Virus record (IMG/VR): IMGVR_UViG_3300043219_000566
Coordinates: 152,502 to 216,501 of that record
DNA: 64,000 nt
Reading direction: 5' to 3' (one strand)
Shown here: piece after piece, positions 31,675 to 47,060 of the stretch
Position numbering within the stretch: position 1 is the stretch's first letter
Layout of the letters: the number at the start of each line of letters is the position of its first letter
Made by a program: the position numbers and the translations under genes
The notes under the pieces: model-generated
Told to the model about the DNA's origin: nothing
The model's input: only the letters and a program-made list of their open reading frames with translations
Databases searched by the model: none

Positions 31675-31687
31675 GATCACCTCCGCA

Positions 31688-31912: not shown

Positions 31913-32030
31913 AGCTACTCCACCTTTCTATGCGGCCACCGCCACAGCGCGAGGCCAAGCACCCACGGCGCGAGACGCCCCAGCGGGACGTCCCACGCAA
32001 CCCAAATCAGAAATCGCTGCAACATCCTCC

Positions 32031-32294: not shown

Positions 32295-32321
32295 CTGTGT
32301 TCTCCTGATAGAAATCCAACC

Positions 32322-33296: not shown

Positions 33297-33338
33297 GCAG
33301 TTTCCTCGACGAGAACCGATCACCACAGCTCAACGACG

Positions 33339-33677
33339 TTACATCGACTTCTCTTGCTTCCGCTGCAACCGCAAGCGGACAAATTGCATCGACTCCCAAC
33401 ACGCCCGCAACCAGAGTTTCTCTCCCTGGTTCAACACAATTCCGCCGCCGTCCTCGTCGTCCAAACGCAACGGATCAGGTTTCAACGTCAGCTTCTTCTC
33501 CCAACCGCAATCGCCCATTCGCACAACGATTTCGCCGGTCTCCAAATTACCCTCGAAGACCGCCTGTTCGCCGTGTTCGTTTTCGTAGTAACCGTGCTGA
33601 ATTTCCTGTCGGTCACCATCGATCTCGGGCGGTGGGCCACTATCCTTGCACTGGTGATTAGAAACTCTGAACAGCAT
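33339..33677 (-). CDS. Hypothetical protein
   Basis: AGGGAG RBS; 112 aa. Confidence 0.6.
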   Translation of the reverse strand: MLFRVSNHQCKDSGPPPEIDGDRQEIQHGYYENEHGEQAVFEGNLETGEIVVRMGDCGWEKKLTLKPDPLRLDDEDGGGIVLNQGEKLWLRACWESMQFVRLRLQRKQEKSM

Positions 33678-33692
33678 ACCGATCTCCCTTTG

Positions 33693-34463: not shown

Positions 34464-34496
34464 GCCGGATCTCCAGAGCACAACGAGTATGGCTTA

Positions 34497-34817
34497 CTAC
34501 GTACCCGACTCGCGCTTTCGCCGGTCCAGTTCAATGCGTAGTCTTTTGCCCGCAGTAAGCATATTCGTAAGCAACGCTTGCAAGCGCGCGTCGTACGCGG
34601 CCGGAGTAGCGCACTCGTGCTCGTACGGAACGGGCACAAAATGGTCAGGTTCAAACCACATGCGGTTGATAAATTTTGAATCCACCGGCAAATTGCCGCT
34701 CTCATCGCGCGCAAAAATACGATTGGCCAATCGATCCACTTCGTCCTTGAACTTGTTGAACGCGAGATCAAACTCTCGCGGATCAGCATCCCCGCCTAGT
34801 CCGCCACTTTTAGCCAT
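34497..34817 (-). CDS. Hypothetical protein
   Basis: GGAGGT RBS + ATG. Confidence 0.6.
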   Translation of the reverse strand: MAKSGGLGGDADPREFDLAFNKFKDEVDRLANRIFARDESGNLPVDSKFINRMWFEPDHFVPVPYEHECATPAAYDARLQALLTNMLTAGKRLRIELDRRKRESGT

Positions 34818-34838
34818 CGAACACCTCCATCATGCGTA

Positions 34839-35672
34839 TCAATGGGCTGCAACGCCCAAATCGACCTCGATTGGTCCGAATACCGCGTCGCTCAGGCGAC
34901 GCACCTCCGCGTCATCCACTACGCGCTGCAGCGGGCGTGCTAGCCCGCGATGCTCCCCGGTGAGCTGCTCCCAGCGCCGCAACACGTTCATGTCCTGGCC
35001 GCGTCCGTCCAGATCCAAGTAGTCGAACGAACTGCCTTGCCCGTGACGAGACACACGCTGCAGCCCAGCGTCGCTGAACGGTACGTCCAGCCATTCGGCC
35101 AACTCACGCCGGTACTCCTCGTCGACGAACCAGCGGTTGTAGTTCACCCGGAGCGCGTCTGGGTAGTGCTCCAGCTCGCCCAGGAACTCGCGCGCGTGCG
35201 CCTTCCACAGCTCCACAGCCCAGTCCAGATGCAGCGGGCTCATCGCTATTCGCAAAGGAAGTTTCTCGGGGGTCTGATTCCACGGAGCCACTGACCACAC
35301 CAGACGGCTAGCAAACGTGTTGTACGGATCTCGCAGCACCAAGATGCAGCGCCGACGACGAGCGCGCCCCAAATGCAGTTGTTCGTAAGCCCCGTAGCGT
35401 GAATTAGCCGCGATCTGCGACGGAATCACGTGAGGAAAGTACTCCTCGAAATTGACGATTGCGGTATTCAGAAATCCGGGACGGCGCGCAGTCTGCCGAT
35501 GCTTCTGCCAAGGACTCAACAGCGACAGGTTGTTGAAGAACTGCGCATCGTCGCCCCACAACCCGAGCATCCAGTTAATCACCGCGTGGTGCCCAGTCCG
35601 GCGCATAGCCACGACGTAGATTATTTCGGCAGTGCGAAGTTCAATCGGATTGACTTCCAGACGGATTCTCAA
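34839..35672 (-). CDS. Sulfotransferase-fold protein (paralog of the upstream gene)
   Basis: AMRRTGHHAVINW, LRDPYNTFASR, VNYNRW, GQGSSFD; GGAGG RBS before TTG at 35672. Confidence 0.75.
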   Translation of the reverse strand: MRIRLEVNPIELRTAEIIYVVAMRRTGHHAVINWMLGLWGDDAQFFNNLSLLSPWQKHRQTARRPGFLNTAIVNFEEYFPHVIPSQIAANSRYGAYEQLHLGRARRRRCILVLRDPYNTFASRLVWSVAPWNQTPEKLPLRIAMSPLHLDWAVELWKAHAREFLGELEHYPDALRVNYNRWFVDEEYRRELAEWLDVPFSDAGLQRVSRHGQGSSFDYLDLDGRGQDMNVLRRWEQLTGEHRGLARPLQRVVDDAEVRRLSDAVFGPIEVDLGVAAH

Positions 35673-36393
35673 TTCCGCCTCCGGGGCCGAAGATTCTTTC
35701 TGCCAGGCGGCGCACGTCGACGTCGGATAGCACGGCCTGAAAAGCAGGCTGGTGCTCAACCGTACGCCAGCGACTCAACACGTCCATCGCCTGAGCATTG
35801 CCTTGATGTGCATACGAATCGAACGAGCTGCCGCCACCGGCCCGCGGGATTCGGTGCAAACCATCGTCAGAAAACTCCAGGCCCAGCTCCGCCGACAGCT
35901 CGCGGCGATAAGCCGCATCAACAAACCAGCGGTTGTAGTTGATGCGCAACAACCCCGGAAACGGCGGCGAACCCAAGTAGAAGCGCGCGTAGTCCTTCCA
36001 TTTCCGAATGTACTTGTCCGGACGCTTGCGAGCTTCTTTGCGAAACCACGGATGCGAAAGACGGCTGGCGAACGTGTTGTAAGGATCTCGCACGACCAGC
36101 AAGTAAATCCGCCGCACGATCTCGCCGAGGCACCGGCGCTCACAGCGACGATAGACACTCTGCGACTCCGGCCGCGTCTCCGCAAAACGATCGACCCGCA
36201 CATCCTCGAAGTTGACGGACAACACTCGCGCCGCTGCCTTGGCGCTGGCCTGCCACTTGAACTGCGGCTTAGTCAGCAACTCGTTGTTGAAATGATGCTG
36301 CGGACCCGGCAATTGCGCCATGACCCAGTCGAGCACAGCATGATGGCCGGAACGCCGCATACCGAGCGTGTACACCATCGTGTCGTATGGCAA
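35641..36393 (-). CDS. Sulfotransferase-fold protein
   Basis: GMRRSGHHAVLDW, VRDPYNTFASR, INYNRW, GGGSSFD. Confidence 0.75.
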   Translation of the reverse strand: MPYDTMVYTLGMRRSGHHAVLDWVMAQLPGPQHHFNNELLTKPQFKWQASAKAAARVLSVNFEDVRVDRFAETRPESQSVYRRCERRCLGEIVRRIYLLVVRDPYNTFASRLSHPWFRKEARKRPDKYIRKWKDYARFYLGSPPFPGLLRINYNRWFVDAAYRRELSAELGLEFSDDGLHRIPRAGGGSSFDSYAHQGNAQAMDVLSRWRTVEHQPAFQAVLSDVDVRRLAERIFGPGGGIENPSGSQSD

Positions 36394-36417
36394 AACAGGC
36401 CCCTACGTGCCGCGTCA

Positions 36418-37431
36418 TCAAGACAACTCGAACGACCGCTCAAGAGCTTCCAAATCGTCCAGACTGGTCAACGCTGCTCTGGTATTCAACAGATACATGC
36501 GCACCCAGCGCTCCGTTAACGACAGCTCGTGATCAACAAACGCACGTCGGAAGTGCAGGTAGCCGCGCCGAGCCATTTCCACTAGCCCCTCCGGCGCGCT
36601 GAGCAACCGCTCCAGACAAGGCACGATGTTTCTGTCCAGCGTGCAGTAGTGATCCTCCGCGCGAAAATCGGCGATCTGGACCTGTTCTCGCTCGTTGATC
36701 GCATCCAGCAGCAACCCGCTGCCCGCCGCCATCACTTCCCACTCACGACGACAACGAAAACCGGAGCCCGGCGGAGAGTAGCACAACAACGCTCGGCCCA
36801 TTCCCCGCAGGTACCCCCGGGGCCTGAGCGCCGCGTTCGAGATACGAAACCGCAGCCCCAGCCGCTTACAGGCCTCGCGCAGCTCGTTAACCCGGCGATG
36901 CCGGTACCGGCGCTTGGGCTCGGCCGCGTTCATGTTGCCAATGAAAAATACGTCTAGCTCACGCGGTCCATCCTTGGGCACCGGCGGAGGATTAGCGAGC
37001 CAGGCATAATGCACCCGCGGCACTGGAAATTGCGGGAAAACCCACAAATTGTAGGTCTGCTGAGCGACGTCAACCGACGTACCCCCCAACGAGCGCCGCG
37101 ACAAGTTGGCCTTGAGGTACACGTGCCGCTCGCAGCAATGCTCCAACAAATGCGGACGCACGATCGAGCCATCGTAGATATCGGTGAACAGCACGCGAGC
37201 TTCGGTATCGCGCAGCAACCGCGCCCAGTATTCGTCGGGCACCATACGCATCCCGAGCTTACACACGGCAACGTAGCCCGGCCCCCGCGGAAACGTCGCA
37301 TGGACCTCGGGCATGAACCCCCGTACAGCTGCCTCGTCTTTGAAATACAGGAATCCCGGGTGCTTGCCCAAATGAATGACCGGATGCCCGTGGTAATGAT
37401 CGGCTTTGTAGCCGCGATCAACTAAGCGCAT
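36418..37431 (-). CDS. GT-B glycosyltransferase-like (CgeB/exostosin-like C-terminus)
   Basis: DVFFIGN...YLRGM...CYSPPGSGFRCRREWEVMAAG...EMARRGY. Confidence 0.7.
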   Translation of the reverse strand: MRLVDRGYKADHYHGHPVIHLGKHPGFLYFKDEAAVRGFMPEVHATFPRGPGYVAVCKLGMRMVPDEYWARLLRDTEARVLFTDIYDGSIVRPHLLEHCCERHVYLKANLSRRSLGGTSVDVAQQTYNLWVFPQFPVPRVHYAWLANPPPVPKDGPRELDVFFIGNMNAAEPKRRYRHRRVNELREACKRLGLRFRISNAALRPRGYLRGMGRALLCYSPPGSGFRCRREWEVMAAGSGLLLDAINEREQVQIADFRAEDHYCTLDRNIVPCLERLLSAPEGLVEMARRGYLHFRRAFVDHELSLTERWVRMYLLNTRAALTSLDDLEALERSFELS

Positions 37432-37447
37432 CAGTTGTTCTCCCGGA

Positions 37448-38176
37448 TCAATATCCGTACACGTCCAGCATGCCCCCAGCCTCGCGGCGAATGATACGCC
37501 GGTCATTTGGCGTCAATCGCGCCCGCGACTCAGCGTCGAAATCAGGATGGCGGCCCAATGGGAACGGGCGACCGTACATGTTCTGCCGCCGGACCGGCGC
37601 GGACAGATCGACCGGCACCGACGCGAGCCCCAGCTCCGCAAGAATACGATCCACGCTGGCCTGGGGCTCGGCGACCAGCGCCTCGTACCGCACCACCAAA
37701 TGACGAACCTGAGCAGCATCGTCCCGCATGATCCGATTGGCCTCACGCCACTGCCTAGCACAGCGCGCGATATCGTGCCCGCGCCGACGCCGCAAACCCT
37801 CGGCCACGGCGTAACCGTCGCGAACCAGGCAGATGAAGATTGCCGGAACGAAGACCGCATTCATGAAGCGCAGGCGCAGAGCATTGTGCGGGCTCTTTTC
37901 CAGCAAGACCTCCCGGTTGCGATCCCACTTGCGGTAGAACGCATTTCGCAATCGTGCCACGTCGCGCGTCGCCACGTCCCGCTCGGTCATACAGAACTTC
38001 TTGGGGTACAAGGCGAACAGCCGCTTGGTCTTCGGCCCACGATCGCGCGGCAGTACCCGGCTGTAGTGATGACCCTCCTTGGGTAAAGTCGACACGGCAG
38101 GATGTTGAGCCAGTAATCCGCGAAGCAAACCGCTCCCGGAGTTGGTCGTTCCCGCGATAAAAGCATGCAGCCGCAT
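37448..38176 (-). CDS. Sulfotransferase (Sulfotransfer_3 type)
   Basis: FIAGTTNSGSGLL..LLAQHP, LEKSPHN, VRDGYAVAEG, VRYEALV; likely start ATG at 38176. Confidence 0.85.
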   Translation of the reverse strand: MRLHAFIAGTTNSGSGLLRGLLAQHPAVSTLPKEGHHYSRVLPRDRGPKTKRLFALYPKKFCMTERDVATRDVARLRNAFYRKWDRNREVLLEKSPHNALRLRFMNAVFVPAIFICLVRDGYAVAEGLRRRRGHDIARCARQWREANRIMRDDAAQVRHLVVRYEALVAEPQASVDRILAELGLASVPVDLSAPVRRQNMYGRPFPLGRHPDFDAESRARLTPNDRRIIRREAGGMLDVYGY

Positions 38177-38178
38177 CG

Positions 38179-38847
38179 TCACACCCACCGTGTGAAACGA
38201 GCTTTTGGCCCCCGCCGGGCAATCTGATGCCGCGCCGCCCACGGCCGCCCGATATCGCGCACCAATACCACGCCCTTGCGCGACGAGTGCATGACCGCGC
38301 AGCGCTCGCGGGAAGCAATACCCCAGGCTTTCCAGCGATACACCTCGTGCAGCTGCGTCTCCGGGTTGAAGCTCTCGTCCAACTTCCCGGCCACCCGGCT
38401 GTAAAACGCGCGACACGTCACGCCCGGAGCCAACGCGATCCGCTGCGACTTGTGCGACTGCGCCCGTCCGACGAAACGAACCTGGTAAATTCCTGGATGA
38501 GCATCGAAAGCACGGTAGACATCGGCCATGCGCGTATCGTTGATCATCTCCCAGTCGTCCTCCAGGTGCAGGATGAACTGGGTATCGGCCTGAGACCAGA
38601 GCCAGTTGATCGCTGCCGTAAAGTTGGGTTTCGCCGAGCAACGCGACACGACCGTGCCAAAGAACCTCCGCGCCACGGCGAGTACGTCGTCGGCCGTGTA
38701 TTTACCTGCCGGAGCTGGATCGACGTTGATATACAGCGTCAGATACTTGAAATCCACATCCTTCAAATGCTTCTGAAATGAAGCGTAGGTACGCCGCAGC
38801 AGGTCCGGCCGCAGCATAGCCGTCGTCGTCACCGAGAGCAGCTTCAT
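38179..38847 (-). CDS. GT-A glycosyltransferase-like
   Basis: TTTAMLRPDLL, INVD, FILHLEDDW, DIGR. Confidence 0.75.
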   Translation of the reverse strand: MKLLSVTTTAMLRPDLLRRTYASFQKHLKDVDFKYLTLYINVDPAPAGKYTADDVLAVARRFFGTVVSRCSAKPNFTAAINWLWSQADTQFILHLEDDWEMINDTRMADVYRAFDAHPGIYQVRFVGRAQSHKSQRIALAPGVTCRAFYSRVAGKLDESFNPETQLHEVYRWKAWGIASRERCAVMHSSRKGVVLVRDIGRPWAARHQIARRGPKARFTRWV

Positions 38848-39572
38848 GCGATTACCCACTCGCTGCCGTAGATCGCTCGGTACTGTTCCCAGACCCCGGC
38901 TCGCAACTGCTCGTCGAACTCGGGCAACAACTGCCCGGGATTGCGCCGGGAGCTATCCCACTTGTTGAATATCTCCCGCGGCGCGGCATCGAGCGTGCGG
39001 GCATTGCTCTGGGCATACTCGTAACGTACGATCCGCCCTCCAGATTCCAGCGCGTCCTGAGCAAACAAGCTCCATTCCCGAATCCAGAAGCTGATACTCG
39101 CTGCCGCATTTACCCCGCCAGTATTAGCGACGAACTCGAAGTGGCGTTTGGGCTTGGTCAAGCTGATGTACTGGTGCACCGGATGCCGAACAATGCAGAT
39201 CAGATCTCGGATCACGTCTCGGTTGCGGGAGAAGAAACCAAACATGGGAGCCCGACTGAACATCGTGACTTTGCGCGGACGACCCTTCATCCAGTGACAG
39301 TAGGCCAGCAAGTTCTGCTCGATGGTTAACCGCTCGTCGCACTGGTAACCAGTACGCCGGTGGAAACCCGCGATTGAAGCCGCAGACGGCCGCGCCGCGT
39401 AACCACGGTGGTCTAACTGCTGATCGAACTTGGTAGCCGACTTTTGTTGCTGCGGAAAGTACCACGGCAACCAATAGGTCTCCGGACGGTAGTGACCGGT
39501 GTAACGTCGCTCAAGCCGTCGTTTCAGCCACGTCGAGCCCGAACCCCCGTAGCAAGCGAAAGCGTACTTCAC
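38844..39572 (-). CDS. Sulfotransferase-fold protein
   Basis: CYGGSGSTWL, VRHPVHQYIS, IVRYE; GTGA-coupled start. Confidence 0.65.
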   Translation of the reverse strand: MKYAFACYGGSGSTWLKRRLERRYTGHYRPETYWLPWYFPQQQKSATKFDQQLDHRGYAARPSAASIAGFHRRTGYQCDERLTIEQNLLAYCHWMKGRPRKVTMFSRAPMFGFFSRNRDVIRDLICIVRHPVHQYISLTKPKRHFEFVANTGGVNAAASISFWIREWSLFAQDALESGGRIVRYEYAQSNARTLDAAPREIFNKWDSSRRNPGQLLPEFDEQLRAGVWEQYRAIYGSEWVIA

Positions 39573-40303
39573 AGCATCTCCCTTCCGAAGCGCCGACGCA
39601 ATTGTCGCGCAAACCGCGGCAGCAGCAGCGCGTACGGAAACGGGCGCGGTGACGACGGAATCTTCCACCGCGCAAGATACCAGGCCAAGATAAACTCGGG
39701 TACGCCGCAGCGATACTTGCGAATCGCACCCAGAATCTCGTCACTCAGCAGCTCGGAGTACAACGCAGCATAAACCCGCATCTGCGCGGGACGCCCTGCC
39801 AGAAACGTGTCGTTGATAGCGTAGCCCGCGCTCGGCAAGCCCTTCACCTTGAAGTTCGAGTAGCACAGCTCCGTGCGAGTCCACGCCAGCAACTTATCCC
39901 AGTCGAGACAGAACGTCGGGTACCAGTCGAAACGGCAACGCAGAATGATGTCGTACTCGTCGAGGTTCCCGATCAACTCGAAAGCACTTTGAATCGTCAA
40001 ATACTGGGCAAATAGCCCGGTCTTGATGCTGAAGCGCTTGCGTTGAAACGGCAGTTGTTCGACCTGTGCGGCTTTGGCCGTGACCTCAGCCGCGACCGCG
40101 TCCCAGGAATGAAGCACCAGCTTACGTGGGCTGTACGTATCCGCAAGCGCCGCCCGGCCCTGCTCACAGCTGTAACCCTCGTCAAACGTGTCCCAGGCAT
40201 AGACATACGTATCGACCTCCTGATCACCGAGCATCTTCCGCCAGGCCGGGGCCGTCTTGGCGAACGTCCGCGGCATACCGCCGAACACCACAGCTACTTT
40301 CAT
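39569..40303 (-). CDS. Putative glycosyl/phospho-transferase-like protein of phage glycan loci
   Basis: MKVAVVFGGMPRTF...YDIILRCRFD...INDTFLAG...PE; ATGA-coupled to the GDPD-like gene. Confidence 0.55.
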   Translation of the reverse strand: MKVAVVFGGMPRTFAKTAPAWRKMLGDQEVDTYVYAWDTFDEGYSCEQGRAALADTYSPRKLVLHSWDAVAAEVTAKAAQVEQLPFQRKRFSIKTGLFAQYLTIQSAFELIGNLDEYDIILRCRFDWYPTFCLDWDKLLAWTRTELCYSNFKVKGLPSAGYAINDTFLAGRPAQMRVYAALYSELLSDEILGAIRKYRCGVPEFILAWYLARWKIPSSPRPFPYALLLPRFARQLRRRFGREML

Positions 40304-40749
40304 GACGTCGCTCCAATGTAACGAGCTGGGTAATCCGAGCAAATCGCGTAGCAGCCCCGCAGCTCATCCGGCGTGTAATTGGCCTGCTCGGGCAATACCG
40401 CGATGCTGCGCTGGGTCAACTGCGCACCGGTCCGCGTCCACACAAGCCCGCACGAAGTCAACGCTACCGCATCCTGGTCGTGAAAGAACACGTGTGCGTA
40501 ATTGAGCAGACGGCAAAGCGCTTCGACATTCTTGGCATGAACCCAAATGTCAGGCTGAGCCAGCCAAAATAGCTCAATGGGCTCCGACGGGCCGTCATGC
40601 CCTAGCCACAGCTCACCCTCATGCCACCAAACGTCGACCTCGACCTGAAAGCCCGCCGCACGCGCAGATTCCAGATACTCAAGCCGATTCTCGCGATTTA
40701 CCACCCGTCCAGCTACATTTCCGCGATGGCTGATGGGTCTTTGATCCAT
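40300..40749 (-). CDS. Minimal glycerophosphodiester phosphodiesterase (GDPD)-like protein
   Basis: ISHRGN, EN, VEVDVW, LGHD, HAKN, ICSDY. Confidence 0.8.
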   Translation of the reverse strand: MDQRPISHRGNVAGRVVNRENRLEYLESARAAGFQVEVDVWWHEGELWLGHDGPSEPIELFWLAQPDIWVHAKNVEALCRLLNYAHVFFHDQDAVALTSCGLVWTRTGAQLTQRSIAVLPEQANYTPDELRGCYAICSDYPARYIGATS

Positions 40750-41336
40750 TTCCGTACCACCGTAATGCCCCAGTCATCGTCGCGCTCCTTGAAGAACTGG
40801 TTCACGTCGAACAGCTCGCGATCGATAGCCGGGAGCAATGCAACCGGACCGGGATGAAAATTCGTGTCATGCAGCACAATAACGCCGAACGGCGAGACAA
40901 ACTCGGCGTAGCGCCAATCGCGCACTACCTGATCGACCGAGTGCCAACCGTCGATGTGTAAGAAGTCGATCACCCGCTCACCGCATAGCTCCTCGACCTT
41001 GGCCATCACGCGCTCTAGGTCCGAGGAGTCGCAGCGCAACGTATGCACGTTGGCGCGCTCGATGTAGCACTTGTCCTGCGTGTCCACGCCCAGGTAAAGC
41101 ACGTCGGCGGGCAATTCCACCAGCAGCACCTGCGTACCGGATGCACCGTCCCCGTGATTGGATACGCCAATTTCCAAAACCAAACGCCTCTGTCCCGCTA
41201 GCGAACGAAATGCTTCGCGCAACACGCTCTGATCGCGCGTAGAGTACACTCTGGAAATGCGCTTCTTAGCCGCAGCAAAATTGGGCGGACGATCCTTGTC
41301 ACCGTTGCTCGGAACATAGGTTAATCCGTAACTCAT
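40713..41336 (-). CDS. Class I SAM-dependent methyltransferase (Methyltransf_24-like)
   Basis: VLEIGV, YLGVD, CDS, IDFLHIDGWHS, GVIVLHDT. Confidence 0.85.
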   Translation of the reverse strand: MSYGLTYVPSNGDKDRPPNFAAAKKRISRVYSTRDQSVLREAFRSLAGQRRLVLEIGVSNHGDGASGTQVLLVELPADVLYLGVDTQDKCYIERANVHTLRCDSSDLERVMAKVEELCGERVIDFLHIDGWHSVDQVVRDWRYAEFVSPFGVIVLHDTNFHPGPVALLPAIDRELFDVNQFFKERDDDWGITVVRKWIKDPSAIAEM

Positions 41337-42529
41337 TCAGTTACTCCCCATAGTCGAATAGCCTGACGGTACTCAGCTCCGTGCTCACCGTCGATCGCCT
41401 GGCGCATCGCCCGCGCGCCTGCCAAGGTTCCGCCGGGATGACCGTGAATACTGCCGCCACAATTCGCCAGCCAGTCGTTACCGAAGCGCTTGACAATCGC
41501 TTGCACCAGCCCCGGGTGCAACCCGCAGCTGAGCGCAGGCAGCACGTCGGCTTGCCGCAGGACGGCCAGCGTCGCGCTCAGCTCATCCTCCGGATCAGAC
41601 AGATACCCGCCCCACATCCCGGCATGAATGAAGTCGACGCCCATCAGGCCCGCCAGCTTGCAAATCACGTTCCAAGAGATGTACGCGCGGTCGGTCGGCG
41701 TGGTCATGATGCGATCGCCGCTTTTCTGAAAGAACAACGCCAACGGCAGATCCAGGCGGCGCACGGCCCGATAGGCTCCCAAGCCACTCCAGATATTGAG
41801 ATGCACAGCATTGCCGCCCAGCTCGTGCACCAACGCTACGCGATCCAGCAGTTCCGGTCCGTCGGCGGTCACACAGACCGCGTAGATCACGTGCTTGTCG
41901 TGCAAGTAGTCCATGATCAGCGGCACCCGCTCCTTCAGCGAGCAGCACGCCGGGTTCGACATGATCTCGTCTTCCTTGATGAAATTGACCCCGCCCGCGA
42001 CCAGCTCCTTGACCACAGCTAGTAACGTGGACGGGCTAATACCCACCTTGGGCTTGATAATCCCACCCAGCAGCGGTTTATCGTGGCAACGGGTAGCCTG
42101 ACGGATGCCGCCGAGCCCGTAGCGCGGCGGCAAGAAGCCCGCGCAAGCTGACTTCGGGATCTCCAGCCCGAGCAATCCGCAGCCCTCGATGAGATCGATG
42201 TCGAGCTGACCACCCATCAACTGACACAGCAATTGAGATATGCCGTCGTTCGGCAAATCGATATTAGCCAGTGGAAACGCGATCTTCACTTCGCCCTTCC
42301 GGCGGCGCGCCAGATCGTCCGGGTCGTGCGGGATCAGACAACCGTGCTTGCGGAACAGCTCGGGGCTCTCCCACGCGCTGCGCATATTCGGGTTGCCAAT
42401 ACTCTGGCCCACCGCCAATGCCCAAGCTGCCTCCTTCAGCGTAGTACGCGAGCGCAAGTTGTAACGCGCAACGATGTACTCCTCGGGGTCGTACTGGCTC
42501 GTGAAAACAATCGACTCAACTGACGACAT
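41333..42529 (-). CDS. RuBisCO-like protein (form IV, divergent)
   Basis: KPLLGGIIKPKVG, GGVNFIKEDE, GVDFIHAG, PALSCGLHPG, CGGSIHGHPGGTLAGARAMRQAI; 398 aa. Confidence 0.93.
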   Translation of the reverse strand: MSSVESIVFTSQYDPEEYIVARYNLRSRTTLKEAAWALAVGQSIGNPNMRSAWESPELFRKHGCLIPHDPDDLARRRKGEVKIAFPLANIDLPNDGISQLLCQLMGGQLDIDLIEGCGLLGLEIPKSACAGFLPPRYGLGGIRQATRCHDKPLLGGIIKPKVGISPSTLLAVVKELVAGGVNFIKEDEIMSNPACCSLKERVPLIMDYLHDKHVIYAVCVTADGPELLDRVALVHELGGNAVHLNIWSGLGAYRAVRRLDLPLALFFQKSGDRIMTTPTDRAYISWNVICKLAGLMGVDFIHAGMWGGYLSDPEDELSATLAVLRQADVLPALSCGLHPGLVQAIVKRFGNDWLANCGGSIHGHPGGTLAGARAMRQAIDGEHGAEYRQAIRLWGVTE

Positions 42530-42839
42530 GCTTGTCTCCCGGCCGCGAAGGGATCTTGACCACGATCAGCTCGCAGTCCTCGTGGAAGACGGGGTCCGCT
42601 AGCTCAAAGGGATGCAGGACAAATACGTCACCGGCCTGCAACTCGCGGTCTTGGATACGCATTCTTCCACGGATGAGGTAGTTGACCTCTACGGATTTCT
42701 TGTGATAGTGCCTCGGCCACTCCTCGCCTTGCCGATGCCGCAGATACCCGACCTCGCAGTCGGCAGTCTGAAAGGCCGCAGGCTCGAAGTTGCCTACGAA
42801 CCAGCCGCCTTCCATCGTCTTGATGTGGCGAATGTCCAT
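42516..42839 (-). CDS. Cupin-fold protein
   Basis: GGWFVGNFEP, HYHKKSVEVNYLIRG, GDVFVL, VVKIPS. Confidence 0.85.
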   Translation of the reverse strand: MDIRHIKTMEGGWFVGNFEPAAFQTADCEVGYLRHRQGEEWPRHYHKKSVEVNYLIRGRMRIQDRELQAGDVFVLHPFELADPVFHEDCELIVVKIPSRPGDKHVVS

Positions 42840-42840
42840 G

Positions 42841-43566
42841 CTACTCGTGGGGCAAGTCTCCCCGCCTCAACTTCTCCAGGAACAACTCCAAGTCCTCGGG
42901 AATCCCAATCGCGTGATGAACCTCCGCCGGAATGCGGTAGACCACCACCTTTGAGCCTGCCTTGATCATGGCGTTGTACGTCGGGCACACGTACGGCTCG
43001 CCATCGTGAGCGCGTTCACCGGTCTGAGCAGCTCGAATGAAGTCCCGCCCGTGACGCCACCAGTGAATGCCGTTGCTGGCGATATCGCTGATGACCCGCT
43101 TCTCGACGATAAGGTCGACGACGTCGTTGTCGTCGACGCGCACGAAGCAGTCCGTCGCCCGACTGCACGGATAGCAAACCACGATGCCGTCTGCGCTAGT
43201 GTGCTCGATGAAAGTCAGAAAGCGCTGCGGGTTCCACGTCATGTACTGATCGCAGTTGGCGATCACCAGCTCGTCGTCGTTGTTGATCAACGCCACAGCC
43301 TGTATGCACGTGTCTGCCGGTCCAGCGGTATCGTCGACAATCACGATCTCCGCCTCGGGATAGTGCTCCAGCACGACCGCATCGATCCCGTAGCGCCTCA
43401 CATGCTCACGATGCAGACAGAAAATCAACCGACCCGGCAGATCCAACGTATCGACCGCCCGCTTGAACATCGGCTCCCCCGCCACGTCGATAAGAGGTTT
43501 GATCGTGTCGATGTTGCCGAACCGCGCTCCACGGCCTGCCATAGGGATAAGAACGTTCCTGCTCAT
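42841..43566 (-). CDS. Sugar-phosphate nucleotidyltransferase
   Basis: IPMAGRGARF, KPLIDV.GEPM, T.GPA.T, IANCDQ, IVEK, IGIPEDL. Confidence 0.9.
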   Translation of the reverse strand: MSRNVLIPMAGRGARFGNIDTIKPLIDVAGEPMFKRAVDTLDLPGRLIFCLHREHVRRYGIDAVVLEHYPEAEIVIVDDTAGPADTCIQAVALINNDDELVIANCDQYMTWNPQRFLTFIEHTSADGIVVCYPCSRATDCFVRVDDNDVVDLIVEKRVISDIASNGIHWWRHGRDFIRAAQTGERAHDGEPYVCPTYNAMIKAGSKVVVYRIPAEVHHAIGIPEDLELFLEKLRRGDLPHE

Positions 43567-44477
43567 CAGCTCTCCAATCGTGTAACGAATTCGCGCATCC
43601 GTTCAGCCCGCGTACCGAACTTCGCGTGCAGCAACTCCACCATATTGGTATTGAGACGCTGCCGCAAACTCTCATCTCGCAACAACCGCGAAACGTAACG
43701 AGCCGCAGTATCGATGTCGCGCGCCGGGTAAACCAACGCAGTCTGCTCGTGGATAGCGTAGTCCTGCATCCCGCTGCGCGGGTGATCGGTACAGACCAGC
43801 GCGCAGCCCGCCAGCGCCGCCTCGATCGGTGGATTGTGCAGGCCCTCCAGCTCGGTGGGCGCAAACCAGACCTTCAGTCCGTTGTACCAGTTGTTCAGCC
43901 GCTCCGGAGTCGGACGCTTGATATGGCGATTGAGCTGCTGGATCGGCTGATCAAGCTGACGTTCGAGAAAGTCGATGTCGCCGTTGCGCTTGGTCGCATG
44001 GCGATTGTTGCGCAGAGCCCCCGCCCCGGCCCGCACGCGCGGAACCAGGTGAAACCAGTGCGGGTCCAGCCCCGGGTACTGCAGCATCACCGAGATCCCG
44101 TACTCTCGCATGTAGGCGTAGAGCCACTGGGAGTTCACGAAGACGCGATCGACCGCCCGAAACGAGCGCAGTAACGTCGCCTCGGTGGCTTTCCACAGCT
44201 CCAGGCCGCGCACGTAGTAGGTCTGCAACCGAGCGGAAGTGTAGCGCGCTACAGATCTGACGCTGTTGATCCCGGTCGCGATGGTCACGTCGCAGGGCGG
44301 ATGCGTCTCGCCCCCGATGCACTCGATCTTCGCCGGATGCCAAGTGTAACGGCTACGTCCACAATGAAAGAAGGCCTTGTGCCCTAGCTCGCGCAGCGTC
44401 TCCACGCAACGCACCAGCGTACGGGAGCCGCCGTTGTTAGCTAGCCCCACGCCGCGCATGTTAAAGCAAATTCTCAT
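43566..44477 (-). CDS. GT-B glycosyltransferase (GT4-like)
   Basis: NNGGSRTL, VNSQWL, EGLHNPPIEAALAGC. Confidence 0.85.
   Translation of the reverse strand: MRICFNMRGVGLANNGGSRTLVRCVETLRELGHKAFFHCGRSRYTWHPAKIECIGGETHPPCDVTIATGINSVRSVARYTSARLQTYYVRGLELWKATEATLLRSFRAVDRVFVNSQWLYAYMREYGISVMLQYPGLDPHWFHLVPRVRAGAGALRNNRHATKRNGDIDFLERQLDQPIQQLNRHIKRPTPERLNNWYNGLKVWFAPTELEGLHNPPIEAALAGCALVCTDHPRSGMQDYAIHEQTALVYPARDIDTAARYVSRLLRDESLRQRLNTNMVELLHAKFGTRAERMREFVTRLES
44241..44252. repeat. 12-bp palindrome GTAGCGCGCTAC (in frame, VARY; extends to 14 bp)
   Basis: tGTAGCGCGCTACa. Confidence 0.9.
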
Positions 44478-44794
44478 AGCTTTATCCGTGCCCAGTGTTC
44501 TTCTGGCTCGTCACATTCGATCACGAGCATGCGAACAACCAGAGCCGGAATGGAAAAAGGCACAAAGCCCCTCAGCCCTCGGCGGCCCATGTTGATTTCC
44601 CAAAACTGCAGCTGCCCCCACTCACCATTCGGCTCGCCGTCTATCGCTCCTAAGAACCGCACCAGTTGCCCTTGGCCCTGAGACCCGAGTTTTCGGAAAG
44701 CATCGATGAACACCGGAACCACGCGGCCAATGTTGGATTCGTCGACAACTTGTCCATCGTACTCGGTAGATAACATCACCACGTACTCCTTCAT
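44474..44794 (-). CDS. Hypothetical protein
   Basis: Stop coupled (ATGA) to the glycosyltransferase start. Confidence 0.55.
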   Translation of the reverse strand: MKEYVVMLSTEYDGQVVDESNIGRVVPVFIDAFRKLGSQGQGQLVRFLGAIDGEPNGEWGQLQFWEINMGRRGLRGFVPFSIPALVVRMLVIECDEPEEHWARIKL

Positions 44795-44801
44795 CACCCG
44801 C

Positions 44802-45602
44802 CTACGTCGCACCAGGAATTTCGGCATCGGCGTCCACGGCATTGGGCCATAGGTCCAGCGCCTTCCGCGGGTCTTCGGCATCGTACTCCCAGAACAGCCG
44901 CCAACGCCAAGCCGGAGCAGGCGGGATTTTGCGGTGCTCAGCCGCGAGCACCACCGACGTCGGAGTATCCGGGTTCACGCGTAGCAAGTGGTTCAGATTG
45001 ATATTGCGATTTTGGCATTCCCAGTTACGTCGACGGACCTGACGAATCCGGATGTCACCGATCAACGTAAGGTGCTCGATGCACTTCTTGTACGGAAACT
45101 TTCCGGTCGCAAAGCCAGCAGCAGTCTCACAAAAACGCGTGAGCGTGAACGGCACCTGCTTGTCGCGCGCCTGCGTCATCAGTGAATCACCCGGAAACTT
45201 GATCTCGGGCATGACCACCACCGTTAGCTCAGGATTTGTCCTATTCGTCTGCGGATGCCAGTGGCCATCCATCTCGCGCTCAAAGAAACGACACCAACGC
45301 AACCACTCCCAATCCGGCTCGGACATAATCGCGCCTGGCCGATGAGTTCCGCGCGCCCGCTCGCCCCTGCAACGCAGCACGCGCTTACCCCGCACCGCAT
45401 CGAGCGCGTGACCAATGTGCGCAGCTGTGCTGCTAGAATAGGTTTCGTCGGGATGCCGAATGTAAAAGATATCCTCCCCCACCCTCCGTCCAATCTCGTA
45501 CCAACTGTGAGACCACAGACTGATCCCGTCTGTGGACATACGGGAACCCCCGCGCTGCTTCCTGGAGATCCAGGCCGCAGCCACGTCGCTATGACTAACC
45601 AT
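44802..45602 (-). CDS. Hypothetical protein
   Basis: GAGGT RBS before ATG at 45602. Confidence 0.6.
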   Translation of the reverse strand: MVSHSDVAAAWISRKQRGGSRMSTDGISLWSHSWYEIGRRVGEDIFYIRHPDETYSSSTAAHIGHALDAVRGKRVLRCRGERARGTHRPGAIMSEPDWEWLRWCRFFEREMDGHWHPQTNRTNPELTVVVMPEIKFPGDSLMTQARDKQVPFTLTRFCETAAGFATGKFPYKKCIEHLTLIGDIRIRQVRRRNWECQNRNINLNHLLRVNPDTPTSVVLAAEHRKIPPAPAWRWRLFWEYDAEDPRKALDLWPNAVDADAEIPGAT

Positions 45603-45615
45603 CGTTACCTCAGAA

Positions 45616-46029
45616 TCAATCGAAACCGGTGAATACCTCATTGGAGAATTTGTCTGCTTCGGAAGCCTCGGGCTGCAAAAGGCCCTGCTTCTCTTTGGCC
45701 CGCTCCCAACGCTGCATAACCGTTGCAACGAACTCGCTCATAACGGCCCGGCGCAATCGGTCGATCAGCTCGCGAAAGCGTGCGTTGTCAGTAGAGCGCA
45801 GATTCGCAAACCCGCGCGTAGCGGTAGAGACTCCGATAACCATGCCTTTGTGCTGAATGGGGTTGCTAGTCTGTACGATGTGATCGTACAGCGCATGACC
45901 GATGATCTTGGATTGCTCCGACGGGCCAAACTTACCTTTCAGCGGCACGCCCCGCCCTTGAAAATCGATACCATCGATCACCCGGTCGCGCTCGCGCTCG
46001 GCTAACTGCACTAGCTGCGCAAAAGTCAC
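45616..46029 (-). CDS. Hypothetical protein
   Basis: GTGA coupling to the upstream kinase. Confidence 0.55.
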   Translation of the reverse strand: MTFAQLVQLAERERDRVIDGIDFQGRGVPLKGKFGPSEQSKIIGHALYDHIVQTSNPIQHKGMVIGVSTATRGFANLRSTDNARFRELIDRLRRAVMSEFVATVMQRWERAKEKQGLLQPEASEADKFSNEVFTGFD

Positions 46030-47060
46030 AGCCCGTTCTCCTTGATGTGCCGATCCAGCGCTGCCAGCAACTGTTCGCGGCTGACCGCGTTCGTATCGTG
46101 GTGCTGCACCGCCTCGGCAGCAGCAACATTGGCGAGCAACGCCGCGTCCGGAGACGATAACCCGCAGGCACAAGCCCAGGCGTAGGTCGCCAGCACGGTA
46201 TCACCCGCGCCGGTGACATTGTACACCTCGCGCGCAAACCGCGGCAGGCAGAGCTGCTCAGCTAGATCATCGTAGACCAGCGTCATGCCGTCCCGCCCAC
46301 GAGTGATAAGCAGCTCATCGATACCCAGAGTCTTAGCAAACTCCCGCGGAGCAACAACCTTACCGGCGTCGTCCAGCTGCCCGCCCATGCGCTCGAACTC
46401 GCGCAAATTGGGCTTCAGCGTAGTGTGGCTGCCGACGTTGGCGCGGTACATGGGTAGCGATTCAGGCTTGCACTCCAGGTAGCAGCGCGCGCGGGACGCG
46501 CGGATGGGCTCCAGCACGTCTTCGGCTATCGTGCCCTTGTCGTAATCAGCCACCACGATGCCGCAGACCATGGAATTGGACAGCGCTGTACGCAGCTCCT
46601 GACACAGGCGATTACGACTTCTCTTGTCGCCGCGGCAGTCTGCGGCAAGAGTAACCGACTCGTCGACCCGCAGCAGCTGCTGCTGATGCTCGGCGATGTA
46701 CCGCGTCTTCCGCTCGGTTCGCAAAGCCGGGAAAGTTACTAGCTGAGCACTGCAGCAGCCAGAAAAGTACGCGGTCAGAAAAGCCCCGTCTTCGTCGCTA
46801 CCCACCCGGCCAACGAGAGCGACCAACGCACCTAACTTCATCAAGTTGTGGGCAACGTTAGCCGCCCCGCCAGGGCACAGGCGAGTACAAGACTGTTGTA
46901 AAACAGGCACCGGGGCTTCGGGCGAGATACGCTTCACCTCGCCGTAAACGTAGCAATCGACCATCACGTCGCCGATAACGACGAAGCGCGGAGCCACGCT
47001 AGAAACCTGACGCAAGTTCTTCGCCGCCGAAACGAGGAATCGTTTGGTGTCGTCGTTCAT
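46026..47060 (-). CDS. HldE/RfaE kinase domain-like (heptose-7-phosphate kinase, PfkB family), stand-alone
   Basis: VIGDVMVDCYVYGEVKRISPEAPVPV, GGAANVA, LLRVD, DYDKG, KPNLREF, NVTGAGDTV. Confidence 0.9.
   Translation of the reverse strand: MNDDTKRFLVSAAKNLRQVSSVAPRFVVIGDVMVDCYVYGEVKRISPEAPVPVLQQSCTRLCPGGAANVAHNLMKLGALVALVGRVGSDEDGAFLTAYFSGCCSAQLVTFPALRTERKTRYIAEHQQQLLRVDESVTLAADCRGDKRSRNRLCQELRTALSNSMVCGIVVADYDKGTIAEDVLEPIRASRARCYLECKPESLPMYRANVGSHTTLKPNLREFERMGGQLDDAGKVVAPREFAKTLGIDELLITRGRDGMTLVYDDLAEQLCLPRFAREVYNVTGAGDTVLATYAWACACGLSSPDAALLANVAAAEAVQHHDTNAVSREQLLAALDRHIKENGL

What the first reader, a model, noticed from the sequence alone, without database searches (positions are those of the whole stretch)
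41333..42529. RLP active site keeps enolisation residues but replaces the carboxylation set
Seen by eye alignment (form I numbering): K175/K177 (IKPK), K201-x-D203-E204 (KEDE instead of KDDE), H327 (FIHAG), S379/G381 (SCG) and G403/G404 are retained. The E60 region reads AVGQSIG, the N123 region MGGQ, H294-R295 becomes QK (FFQKSG), and loop-6 K334 becomes Y (WGGY). Established: K334, H294, N123 and E60 are needed for CO2 fixation. Inference: it is not a carbon-fixation auxiliary gene; the Q-K and loop-6 Tyr signature points to a distinct substrate and reaction.
Basis: partly seen in the sequence, partly recalled or inferred. Interest (0 to 1): 0.7.

Follow-up and report, generated by a model that had tools for sequence, protein, structure and literature searches.

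The report
Phage RuBisCO-like enzyme in sugar-activation cassette
A 216-kb phage carries a RuBisCO look-alike that cannot fix CO2 but keeps the proton-abstracting core, and it is almost always paired (sometimes fused) with a sugar-nucleotide-forming enzyme inside surface-sugar gene islands, so it most likely helps build an unusual activated sugar rather than fix carbon.

Summary
ORF 41333-42529 (-) encodes a 398-aa RuBisCO large-subunit homologue. It keeps K175, K177, K201, D203, E204, H327, S379, G381, G403 and G404. It replaces E60 (G), N123 (G), H294 (Q), R295 (K), H298 (D), K334 (Y) and G380 (C). This signature is invariant in 110-120 homologues of 57-71% identity. It defines a clade with 99% support, separate from bona fide RuBisCO, MtnW-type and 3nwr/Oia-type RLPs.

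The window lies in a 216.5-kb phage genome with no phosphoribulokinase, R15P isomerase/MtnA or small subunit. The clade matches the uncharacterised "Form IV-like" phage/Beckwithbacteria RLPs of Jaffe et al. 2019, so it is described but has no known function.

New here is a conserved cassette seen across 120 loci:
- A dedicated nucleotidyltransferase is present in 111 loci, and RLP-nucleotidyltransferase fusions occur in both orders.
- A GDPD-type phosphodiesterase is present in 104 loci, either as a 149-aa mini form or, exclusively, as a full-length form.
- A 107-aa cupin is present in 57 loci.

The cassette sits in glycan islands of large phages, SAR11, CPR bacteria and DPANN archaea. The best reading is an enolising isomerase or epimerase of a phosphorylated keto-sugar that feeds a nucleotide-sugar pathway. 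The substrate is unknown.

The parts
41333..42529 (-). RuBisCO-like protein (Form IV-like clade), 398 aa. The carbamate/Mg site and the enolisation residues are kept. The carboxylation residues are replaced (Q268, K269, D272, Y309, C335).
   Evidence: for sequence, family scores and signature. AF2 model pLDDT 92.5. TM 0.87 to form III RuBisCO. Homodimer model score 0.93 against a best control of 0.00.
42535..42540 (-). GGGAGA ribosome-binding-like site 5 nt before the RLP ATG. It lies inside the 3' end of the cupin gene, which suggests translational coupling.
42516..42839 (-). 107-aa single-domain cupin with an H-x-H...E motif. It lies directly upstream of the RLP.
   Evidence: Same family in 57 of 120 loci, usually at position -1. 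Cupin_7/Cupin_2 hits and weak hits to CapF-type Polysacc_synt_C.
42841..43566 (-). Sugar-phosphate nucleotidyltransferase (NTP_transferase fold), 241 aa. It is the dedicated partner of the RLP.
   Evidence: Same family in 111 of 120 loci. Fused to the RLP in both orders, P0034-type and P0121. Best PDB match is 4evw, E 2e-33.
40713..41336 (-). Methyltransferase-like protein, 207 aa (Methyltransf_24/TylF type). Its start overlaps the RLP stop by 4 nt.
   Evidence: Same family in 23 of 120 loci. FkbM and TylF methyltransferases occupy this position in other loci.
40300..40749 (-). 149-aa miniature glycerophosphodiester-phosphodiesterase-like protein with the H-R...E-N...E-x-D...H-D...H-x-K motifs.
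   Evidence: Same family in 95 of 120 loci. PDB profile hit to GDPD 7e0v, E 1.2e-4. AF2 pLDDT 96. VIA Z about 10 to GDPDs. hhalign 96.4% to the full-length GDPDs that replace it in 9 loci.
43566..44477 (-). Family 1/4 glycosyltransferase, 303 aa, directly upstream of the nucleotidyltransferase.
46026..47060 (-). PfkB-family carbohydrate kinase, 344 aa. It is a possible supplier of a phosphorylated sugar but is not part of the conserved core (4 loci only).
25025..47060 (-). Glycan-biosynthesis island of about 22 kb around the cassette: GT2 (25025-25792), SIS isomerase (25991-26668), GT9 (29738-30646), GT1 (32322-33326), sulfotransferases (33693-34481 and 37448-38641), and several ORFs without a family.
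   Evidence: The same SIS, PfkB and GT9 set flanks the cassette in a Pelagibacter chromosome.

Best explanation
The gene encodes a functional, dimeric, non-carboxylating member of the RuBisCO superfamily. It belongs to the 'Form IV-like' RLP clade.

Mechanism. Like all characterised relatives, it most likely uses a carbamylated Lys (K185) with Mg2+ held by D187 and E188 to pull a proton from the carbon next to a keto group of a phosphorylated sugar. This forms a metal-bound enediolate. Where RuBisCO would add CO2, this enzyme re-protonates the intermediate, so the reaction is an isomerisation or epimerisation. The family-specific residues Y309 on loop 6, Q268 and C335 are the candidates for that step. 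The P1 phosphate cradle (G336, G358, G359) is intact. The distal site keeps a cation and a histidine (K/R269, H302), so the substrate probably carries an anionic group at both ends.

Pathway. The enzyme works in one pathway with a dedicated nucleotidyltransferase, a GDPD-type phosphodiesterase or phosphotransferase and often a small cupin and O-methyltransferases. Together they would make a nucleotide-activated rare sugar, or sugar-phosphate substituent. Glycosyltransferases of the phage's 22-kb glycan island would then place it on a glycan of the virion or the infected cell's envelope.

What is shown and what is inferred. Shown: the residue pattern, its conservation, the fold, the clade, the gene neighbourhood and the fusions. 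Inferred: carbamylation, enolisation, the kind of substrate, the order of steps and the glycan target.
For: Active-site pattern and conservation.
- Residue mapping and its invariance in 110-120 homologues.

Fold and dimer.
- Full RuBisCO large-subunit fold, pLDDT 92.5, TM 0.87 to form III enzymes, at most 29% identity to any solved or reviewed protein.
- Homodimer model: score 0.93, best of 3 controls 0.00. That mark was reached by 20 of 30 proteins solved as pairs of one chain and by 1 of 23 solved as single chains.
- N-domain residues 41-46 and 105-107 lie in the same interface as 159-164, 187-195, 309-310, 335 and 358-359.
- Because RuBisCO dimers are solved, this pass shows likeness, possibly from the model's memory.

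Clade.
- Separate clade with SH-aLRT 99.

Neighbourhood in 120 loci (80 IMG/VR, 34 genomes, 5 assemblies, the window).
- Nucleotidyltransferase in 111 loci.
- Mini-GDPD in 95 and full-length GDPD in 9, never both in one locus.
- Cupin in 57.

Fusions.
- NT-RLP fusions (P0034, P0086 and six others) and an RLP-NT fusion (P0121).
- In the same superfamily, R15P-isomerase-RuBisCO fusions join consecutive pathway enzymes (P0160, P0167).

Glycan context.
- Epimerase/dehydratases, DegT aminotransferase, CMP-sugar synthetases, GT families 1, 2, 8, 9 and 29, and FkbM/TylF methyltransferases.

Literature.
- All characterised RLPs share enediolate formation on RuBP-like substrates (review PMC10176493).
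Against: - There is no biochemical evidence for any member of this clade.
- The substrate, the nucleotide and the product are unknown.
- The role of a GDPD-type enzyme in a biosynthetic route has no close precedent that I could find.
- Neighbourhood in glycan islands could in part reflect co-regulation rather than one pathway, although fusions in both orders argue against that.
- The nucleotidyltransferase's best solved relative (4evw) is itself uncharacterised.
- The PfkB kinase that could supply a bisphosphate is in only 4 loci.
- In one Pelagibacter genome the mini-GDPD match carries two stops.
- Loop 6, which carries Y309, is the least confident part of the model: residues 307-309 have pLDDT below 50. 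This is expected for a mobile loop but prevents geometric arguments.
Confidence: 0.6

Rival explanations
1. The same cassette, but the RLP acts after the nucleotidyltransferase. Its substrate would be a nucleotide-linked keto-sugar (NDP-ulose), with the diphosphate sitting in one of the two phosphate sites. The RLP and the cupin would then be successive enolising epimerases or isomerases on the NDP-sugar.
For: - The gene order NT-cupin-RLP is conserved in phage loci.
- The cupin shows weak similarity to the CapF-type cupin domain (Polysacc_synt_C; 7 of 31 members, best E 0.0025).
- From my own knowledge of the literature, not tested here, that domain epimerises a UDP-4-hexulose.
- The distal site keeps K/R269 and H302.
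- The nucleotidyltransferase motif and PDB hits are of the sugar-1-phosphate type.
Against: - No known RuBisCO-superfamily enzyme takes a nucleotide-linked substrate.
- Fusions occur in both orders, so gene order says little.
- The cupin hits are below Pfam cut-offs.
Confidence: 0.2
2. A catabolic or salvage RLP acting as an auxiliary metabolic gene. It would be a decarboxylase, transcarboxylase or oxygenase on a branched or acid sugar phosphate (D-apiose or D-hamamelose type), helping the infected cell use a carbon source.
For: - The best PDB sequence match is the B. fungorum RLP 3nwr (E 3.6e-39).
- OiaX gives a weak NCBIfam hit.
- The characterised RLP reactions outside methionine metabolism listed in the review are decarboxylation in D-apiose catabolism and oxygenation in the D-hamamelose pathway (PMC10176493).
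Against: - OiaX scores 138.9 against a cut-off of 700.
- The 3nwr/Oia-like group keeps H294, R295 and K334 and forms a different clade.
- No transporter, dehydrogenase or DUF1537-type kinase is among the families recurrent around the RLP in the 120 loci.
- The neighbours are biosynthetic glycan genes instead.
Confidence: 0.08
3. A methionine-salvage or MTA-metabolism RLP: either a DK-MTP-1-P enolase like MtnW, or a 5-methylthioribulose-1-P isomerase like the R. rubrum RLP.
For: Weak NCBIfam hits to the MtnW models. Structural similarity to G. kaustophilus MtnW, TM 0.84.
Against: - MtnW models score 140.7 against 409 and 111.4 against 513.6.
- The MtnW-like signature (K at 123, H-P at 294/295, S/A at 298, L at 327, S at 334) differs at every variable site, and that clade is separate with support 100.
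- The distal site stays cationic here, instead of being small or hydrophobic as in MtnW-like rows.
- The phage has no MtnA/IF-2B gene.
- No mtn genes are among the recurrent neighbours.
- No named R. rubrum reference sequence was available, so that comparison is indirect.
Confidence: 0.04
4. A bona fide CO2-fixing RuBisCO, for example one feeding a form III nucleotide-salvage (AMP) pathway.
For: The highest NCBIfam score and the best fold matches are to form III enzymes.
Against: - E60, N123, H294 and K334 are all replaced, invariantly across the family.
- The type III model scores 172.6 against 497.
- The genome has no PRK, no R15P isomerase and no small subunit.
Confidence: 0.02
5. A catalytically dead scaffold or regulatory protein that merely keeps the fold.
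For: None specific. It is considered only because some superfamily members have no assigned activity.
Against: About 90 invariant columns, including the complete metal/carbamate triad, the K-P-K motif, the phosphate cradle and the family-specific Q, K, Y and C, in sequences only 57-71% identical. That is the pattern of a conserved active site.
Confidence: 0.02

Closest known systems
'Form IV-like' RuBisCO-like proteins of phages and Beckwithbacteria (Jaffe et al. 2019, Mol Biol Evol 36:435; PMC6389311)
   Same: - Carried by large phages from IMG/VR.
- Groups with Beckwithbacteria and Patescibacteria sequences (L012 59% identical, L008 60%).
- Branches outside the other RLPs.
- Key residues differ from the known type IV clades.
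   Different: That paper left the function open and did not report the nucleotidyltransferase/GDPD/cupin cassette, the fusions, or the presence in SAR11 glycan islands.
2,3-diketo-5-methylthiopentyl-1-phosphate enolase MtnW (IV-YkrW; G. kaustophilus, PDB 2oej/2oek/2oem)
   Same: Same fold (TM 0.84). Same K-P-K motif, the K-x-D-E carbamate/Mg site and the glycine phosphate cradle. No carboxylation. It works by enolisation.
   Different: At most 28% identity. Different residues at 123, 294, 295, 298, 327 and 334. Separate clade. The distal pocket is small or hydrophobic in MtnW-like rows and cationic here. No methionine-salvage neighbours.
Burkholderia fungorum RLP (PDB 3nwr) and the 3-oxo-isoapionate-4-phosphate decarboxylase OiaX group
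   Same: Best sequence match among solved structures (E 3.6e-39). Same metal site.
   Different: That group keeps H294, R295 and K334 (signature HR[W/F]HKF) and has S or N at position 177. It forms a different clade. OiaX scores 138.9 against a cut-off of 700. It has a catabolic rather than a glycan context.
Form III RuBisCO (T. kodakarensis 3a12/3a13; 8dht)
   Same: Closest overall structure (TM 0.87-0.89). Length and domain layout are similar. A dimer with shared active sites is predicted.
   Different: 25-27% identity. E60, N123, H294 and K334 are replaced. No R15P isomerase or AMP phosphorylase context.
Rhodospirillum rubrum RLP (5-methylthio-D-ribulose-1-phosphate isomerase; Imker et al. 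2008, cited in PMC10176493)
   Same: It is the precedent for the reaction type proposed here: enolisation followed by re-protonation, giving an isomer.
   Different: It works in MTA metabolism. No named reference sequence was available here. No representative outside the clade shares the Q/K/Y/C signature.

Membership tests
RuBisCO large-subunit superfamily (Pfam PF00016) | Significant match to the catalytic-domain model above the gathering score | tested here: met
   121.8 bits against a cut-off of 30.1, E 4.5e-35.
RuBisCO large-subunit superfamily (Pfam PF00016) | N-terminal alpha/beta domain plus C-terminal TIM barrel fold | tested here: met
   AF2 pLDDT 92.5. TM 0.84-0.89 to RuBisCOs and RLPs over the whole length.
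RuBisCO large-subunit superfamily (Pfam PF00016) | K-x-D-E carbamate/Mg2+ site and the K175-P-K177 motif | tested here: met
   K185, D187, E188, K159 and K161 are invariant in 120 homologues.
RuBisCO large-subunit superfamily (Pfam PF00016) | Head-to-tail dimer with active sites shared between subunits | tested here: met
   Prediction only. Score 0.93 against a best control of 0.00. The interface holds 41-46 and 105-107 together with 159-164, 187-195, 309-310, 335 and 358-359. The pass may come from the model's memory of solved dimers.
Bona fide RuBisCO (forms I-III) | Carboxylation residues E60, N123, H294 and K334 | tested here: not met
   G41, G107, Q268 and Y309, invariant in the family.
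Bona fide RuBisCO (forms I-III) | Score above the NCBIfam equivalog cut-offs | tested here: not met
   TIGR03326: 172.6 against 497.45. NF003252: 150.6 against 438. NF010002: 73 against 489.
Bona fide RuBisCO (forms I-III) | A supplier of RuBP in the genome (PRK or R15P isomerase), and a small subunit for form I | tested here: not met
   No PF00485, PF01008 or PF00101 match in the complete 216.5-kb genome, while the controls matched. A host could in principle supply them.
DK-MTP-1-P enolase MtnW (IV-YkrW) | Equivalog score, clade membership and the active-site signature (Lys at position 123) | tested here: not met
   NF007095: 140.7 against 409. TIGR03332: 111.4 against 513.6. Separate clade with a different signature.
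3-oxo-isoapionate-4-phosphate decarboxylase OiaX | Equivalog score and the H294/R295/K334-retaining signature | tested here: not met
   NF042437: 138.9 against 700. Signature and clade differ.
'Form IV-like' RLP clade (Jaffe et al. 2019) | Phage-borne sequences that group with Beckwithbacteria | tested here: met
   The window is a phage. Relatives are in 333 IMG/VR contigs. The window groups in a 95-row, mostly viral clade (SH-aLRT 95) with Beckwithbacteria L012 and Patescibacteria L008.
'Form IV-like' RLP clade (Jaffe et al. 2019) | Branches outside all other RLP clades | tested here: inconclusive
   The clade is one side of a branch with 99% support and falls opposite all other representatives under midpoint rooting. 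The root is not established, and named reference RLPs were not available.
'Form IV-like' RLP clade (Jaffe et al. 2019) | Identity with the sequences in that paper's data set | not testable with these tools
   No supplementary files are held.
Glycerophosphodiester phosphodiesterase (GDPD, PF03009), for the 149-aa partner | Catalytic motifs H-R, E-N, E-x-D, H-D and H-x-K | tested here: met
   H8, R9, E20, N21, E37, D39, H51, D52, H71 and K73 are invariant in 30 members.
Glycerophosphodiester phosphodiesterase (GDPD, PF03009), for the 149-aa partner | Homology to recognised GDPDs | tested here: met
   PDB profile hit 7e0v, E 1.2e-4. hhalign 96.4%, E 1.1e-9, to the full-length Pfam-positive GDPDs of sister loci. 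VIA Z 9.5-10.1 to many GDPDs.
Glycerophosphodiester phosphodiesterase (GDPD, PF03009), for the 149-aa partner | Pfam gathering score and full barrel length (about 220-250 aa) | tested here: not met
   No Pfam hit for any of 30 members. The protein has 149 aa, so about 100 residues of the barrel are missing. It is a reduced relative and not a typical member.

The most novel reading that the evidence does not exclude
This would be the first RuBisCO-superfamily enzyme with a biosynthetic role. A three-to-five-gene cassette (RLP, dedicated nucleotidyltransferase, GDPD-type enzyme, with or without a cupin and O-methyltransferases) would make a so far unknown nucleotide-activated sugar or sugar-phosphate decoration. 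The cassette is traded between jumbo phages, SAR11 hypervariable glycan islands, CPR bacteria and DPANN archaea. Phages would use it to redecorate their own particles or the surface of the infected cell.
Probability: 0.45. Interest if true: 0.8.

Novelty: new member of a known kind. Interest (0 to 1): 0.6.

Why it matters
Phage RuBisCO homologues are easily scored as carbon-fixation auxiliary genes in viromes, and this one clearly is not. The clade is abundant: 333 IMG/VR contigs carry it, more than 2,700 database homologues were found, and it occurs in SAR11, among the most numerous marine bacteria. It has had no function since it was described in 2018-2019.

The conserved partners found here make the open question a tractable experiment. 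A small cassette can be expressed and its nucleotide-sugar product identified. If the biosynthetic reading holds, it would extend the chemistry of the RuBisCO superfamily from catabolism and salvage to glycan building. It would also point to a new surface-sugar determinant in phage-host recognition in the ocean.

Tried and rejected
- tblastn of the RLP against 50,697 GenBank phage records gave no match.
- PHROGs gave only generic phage functions for the large ORFs.
- The Pfam Gp23 model found nothing, but it also matched none of the control genomes, so it says nothing about the phage type.
- The RLP active-site tables of Tabita et al. 2007 and 2008 could not be read because the papers are not held. 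A comparison with their IV-GOS clade was therefore not possible.
- No supplementary files of Jaffe et al. are held.
- Literature searches returned nothing for RLP with nucleotidyltransferase and glycosyltransferase, for RLP with huge phages, or for four RLP/viral auxiliary-gene terms together. A SAR11/RLP/hypervariable search returned one paper, on Antarctic soil microorganisms, which was not opened.
- A phylogenetic-profile test in the Pelagibacter family was dropped because only 2 of 201 sampled genomes carry the RLP.
- Pfam finds no family for the 149-aa partner. It was identified only by profile and fold comparison.
- Promoter and terminator scans of 38-48 kb gave no more sites than shuffled sequence.
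- No tRNA genes were found in the window.
- I considered a specific substrate (RuBP/XuBP epimerisation, pentulose-5-P to pentulose-1-P carbonyl migration, or branched-sugar rearrangement). Nothing computed discriminates between them, so I name none.
Full report
**What is there**

The window is the last 64 kb of a 216,501-bp IMG/VR virus record rated complete by CheckV. Several features mark it as a phage:
- a ribonucleotide reductase large subunit;
- a terminase large subunit;
- an RNA-ligase-like protein;
- HNH endonucleases.

G+C is an even 57-62% across the window, and the RLP locus has the same composition (0.591). Its ATG follows a GGGAGA site by 5 nt and lies inside the end of the preceding gene. 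No promoter-like or terminator-like excess interrupts the gene string. The string reads GT1, nucleotidyltransferase, cupin, RLP, methyltransferase, 149-aa protein, and the genes abut or overlap.

**Checking the observation**

All quoted motifs are present. I aligned the protein with 115 other superfamily representatives. In that alignment, bona fide-like rows display the canonical residues in every scored column, which validates the mapping.
- Kept: K175, K177, K201, D203, E204, H327, L335, S379, G381, G403 and G404.
- Replaced: E60->G41, T65->N46, N123->G107, H294->Q268, R295->K269, H298->D272, K334->Y309 and G380->C335.

HMMER alignments to 8dht, 3nwr and 2oej agree. The pattern is not a quirk of one sequence. 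Every one of these positions is invariant or nearly so in 120 homologues that are only 57-71% identical overall.

**What kind of protein**

- Pfam places it in RuBisCO_large.
- All NCBIfam equivalog models (type III, form I/II, MtnW, OiaX) score at a third or less of their cut-offs.
- The AlphaFold model is confident (pLDDT 92.5), with loop 6 the only poorly defined piece.
- The model superposes on form III RuBisCOs at TM 0.87-0.89 and on MtnW at 0.84. Identity to any solved or Swiss-Prot protein is never above 29%.
- A homodimer prediction passes. The score is 0.93 and the best of 3 controls is 0.00. That mark was reached by 20 of 30 proteins solved as pairs of one chain and by 1 of 23 solved as single chains.
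- In the predicted dimer, N-domain residues 41-46 and 105-107 lie in the same interface as the C-domain catalytic residues. Because RuBisCO dimers are solved, this shows likeness rather than independent proof.

**Which lineage**

An exhaustive HMMER search of 1.84 billion representatives finds a sharply bounded family, then a gap to other RLPs and RuBisCOs at about 35% identity or less. In a tree of 108 representatives, the 26 rows with the Q294/Y334/C380 signature form one clade (SH-aLRT 99). That clade is separate from MtnW-like, 3nwr/Oia-like and bona fide-like groups. None of those groups shares the signature.

Relatives are encoded on 333 IMG/VR contigs, many of 100-300 kb. In genomes they occur in:
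- Pelagibacterales, including a complete chromosome;
- Beckwithbacteria and other Patescibacteria;
- Woese-, Nano-, Pace- and Micrarchaeota;
- Verrucomicrobia and Planctomycetes.

Within the family, the window's protein sits on a long, compositionally deviant branch. That branch lies in the mostly viral sub-clade, which also holds the Beckwithbacteria and Patescibacteria sequences. This matches the 'Form IV-like' RLPs that Jaffe et al. reported from about 80-90 phage scaffolds, a phage of about 200 kb and Beckwithbacteria, whose function they left 'unclear'. I found no later paper that assigns a function. So the lineage is described but uncharacterised.

**Not carbon fixation, not methionine salvage**

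Four residues required for carboxylation are gone. The complete phage genome has no phosphoribulokinase, no IF-2B-type isomerase (R15P isomerase or MtnA) and no small subunit, while the controls matched. The MtnW-like group has small or hydrophobic residues in the distal pocket (P295, S/A298, L327). This family keeps K or R at 295 and His at 327, which points to an anionic distal group.

**The surroundings**

This is the new information. I called ORFs in 120 loci and clustered them: 80 viral contigs, 34 genome contigs, 5 assembly contigs and the window.

| Partner | Window coordinates | Loci (of 120) | Usual position |
|---|---|---|---|
| Nucleotidyltransferase family | 42841-43566 | 111 | within two genes in 95 loci |
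| 149-aa protein | 40300-40749 | 95 | directly downstream |
| 107-aa cupin | 42516-42839 | 57 | directly upstream |
| TylF/Methyltransf_24-like methyltransferase | 40713-41336 | 23 | FkbM-type methyltransferases take the slot elsewhere |

Most loci that lack a partner end at a contig edge.

The RLP is also fused to the nucleotidyltransferase in both orders. NT-RLP proteins of 634-651 aa include P0034, P0086 and six others. P0121 is an RLP-NT fusion of 667 aa. In the same superfamily search, R15P-isomerase-RuBisCO fusions appear (P0160, P0167). Those join two consecutive enzymes of the AMP pathway, so fusion here is a reasonable sign of pathway coupling.

**The partners**

*Nucleotidyltransferase.* It has the sugar-1-phosphate-type glycine-rich motif. 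Its best solved relative is an uncharacterised V. cholerae NDP-sugar pyrophosphorylase (4evw, E 2e-33). That is far ahead of mannose-1-P, heptose-1-P and glucose-1-P enzymes, which score E 1e-9 to 1e-8.

*The 149-aa protein.* It has no Pfam hit, but several lines of evidence point to a GDPD relative:
- It carries the GDPD catalytic motifs H-R, E-N, E-x-D, H-D and H-x-K, all invariant.
- It matches GDPD 7e0v by profile, E 1.2e-4.
- It folds with pLDDT 96.
- GDPDs are its top structural matches: Foldseek probability 0.99, VIA Z about 10 over all 149 residues.
- Nine loci, mostly of DPANN type, lack it. Each of these has instead a full-length, Pfam-positive GDPD within a few genes, and no locus has both.
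- Profile-profile comparison of the two gives 96.4% probability, E 1.1e-9, end to end.

A GDPD-type activity is therefore part of the module in 104 of 120 loci.

*Cupin.* It has an H-x-H...E motif and generic cupin hits. Seven of 31 members give weak hits to the CapF-type cupin.

**Wider context**

In phages and cells alike, the cassette sits among glycan genes:
- SDR epimerase/dehydratases (47 loci);
- DegT aminotransferase;
- UDP-GlcNAc 2-epimerase;
- UDP-sugar dehydrogenase;
- CMP-sugar synthetases;
- GT families 1, 2, 8, 9 and 29;
- WavE.

In the window, a glycan island of about 22 kb holds GT2, SIS, GT9, GT1 and two sulfotransferases, as well as a PfkB kinase. In the complete Pelagibacter chromosome the cassette lies beside SIS, PfkB, a cytidylyltransferase-like protein, a HAD-NTP-transferase protein, GT9 and a CMP-sugar synthetase. 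Only 2 of 201 sampled genomes of that family carry the RLP. This is typical of strain-variable surface-glycan genes.

**How it most likely works**

Shown: the metal/carbamate triad, the K-P-K motif, the P1 phosphate cradle and His327 are conserved. The carboxylation residues are replaced by an invariant Q, K/R, Y and C. The enzyme is tied to a nucleotidyltransferase and a GDPD-type enzyme in glycan islands.

Established knowledge: all characterised RLPs begin with formation of an enediolate on a RuBP-like substrate. They differ in what follows, which may be re-protonation, isomerisation, decarboxylation or oxygenation (PMC10176493).

Inference: this enzyme enolises a phosphorylated keto-sugar that has an anionic group at both ends and then re-protonates it, so the reaction is an isomerisation or epimerisation. 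Y309 on loop 6 or C335 is the likely second acid/base. Either the product is activated by the nucleotidyltransferase, or the RLP acts on the activated keto-sugar (rival 1). The GDPD-type enzyme then handles a phosphodiester step, either transfer of a sugar-phosphate or a cyclisation or cleavage. Methyltransferases and the cupin tailor the sugar, and the island's glycosyltransferases install it. Which glycan is modified is unknown; it could be on the virion or on the host envelope. I put 0.6 on the general statement and much less on any single step.

**Comparison and novelty**

The gene is a member of the RuBisCO superfamily and, on the features I could test, of the Form IV-like clade. It fails the membership tests for bona fide RuBisCO, MtnW and OiaX. 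It works like the enolising RLPs, with the R. rubrum isomerase as the closest mechanistic precedent, but it belongs to none of the characterised families.

The gene itself is a new member of a known, uncharacterised kind. What appears not to have been reported is the conserved cassette, the two-way fusions, the reduced GDPD partner and its exclusive alternation with a full-length GDPD, and the link to SAR11, CPR and DPANN glycan islands.

**Verdict**

The gene is ordinary in that the clade has been described. It is of more than ordinary interest because the context now offers a concrete, testable function for an abundant orphan branch of the RuBisCO superfamily.

Noticed in passing
window 16715-20173 (-): The ribonucleotide reductase large subunit is 1152 aa. 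An HNH-endonuclease-like stretch at about aa 434-570 is embedded in the RNR match. It looks like an intein or homing-endonuclease insertion.
   Followed up: no
window 25025-47060 (-): A glycan island of about 22 kb, unusually large for a phage: GT2, SIS isomerase, GT9, GT1, two sulfotransferases, a PfkB kinase and many ORFs with no family. The sulfotransferases suggest a sulfated glycan.
   Followed up: partly
window 27663-29728 (-): A thymidylate-kinase-like gene lies close to a DUF4406 / nucleoside 2-deoxyribosyltransferase-like plus DUF6378 protein. This is possibly nucleotide or DNA-modification metabolism.
   Followed up: no
window 54021-55202 (-) and 61389-63155 (-): A free-standing HNH endonuclease of 393 aa. 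The terminase large subunit lies near the end of the record.
   Followed up: no
proteins P0160, P0167, P0173 (representative search): Other fusions in the superfamily: IF-2B (R15P-isomerase-like)-RuBisCO proteins of 726 and 742 aa, and a TIR-domain-RLP fusion of 583 aa. The TIR fusion hints at a defence-related use of an RLP.
   Followed up: no
L123 / G001:C1:126106-126495 (Ca. Pelagibacter sp. Uisw_094): The mini-GDPD match next to the RLP has two TAA stops inside it, so the partner may be decaying in this isolate.
   Followed up: no
L014 vs L092; L016 vs L120; L015 vs L112: In three cases an RLP on a contig binned into a MAG (Crocinitomicaceae, Methanobacteriota, Phycisphaerales) pairs with an IMG/VR viral one. 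L014 and L092 are identical; the other two are close sister pairs. These contigs are probably phage DNA binned into cellular MAGs, so the cellular host range of the family is overstated.
   Followed up: partly
L017, L023, L030, L032, L033, L035, L038 (mostly DPANN-type loci): These loci carry two copies of the nucleotidyltransferase family. One is next to the RLP. The other is usually next to the full-length GDPD on the opposite strand, which suggests two paired sub-modules.
   Followed up: no
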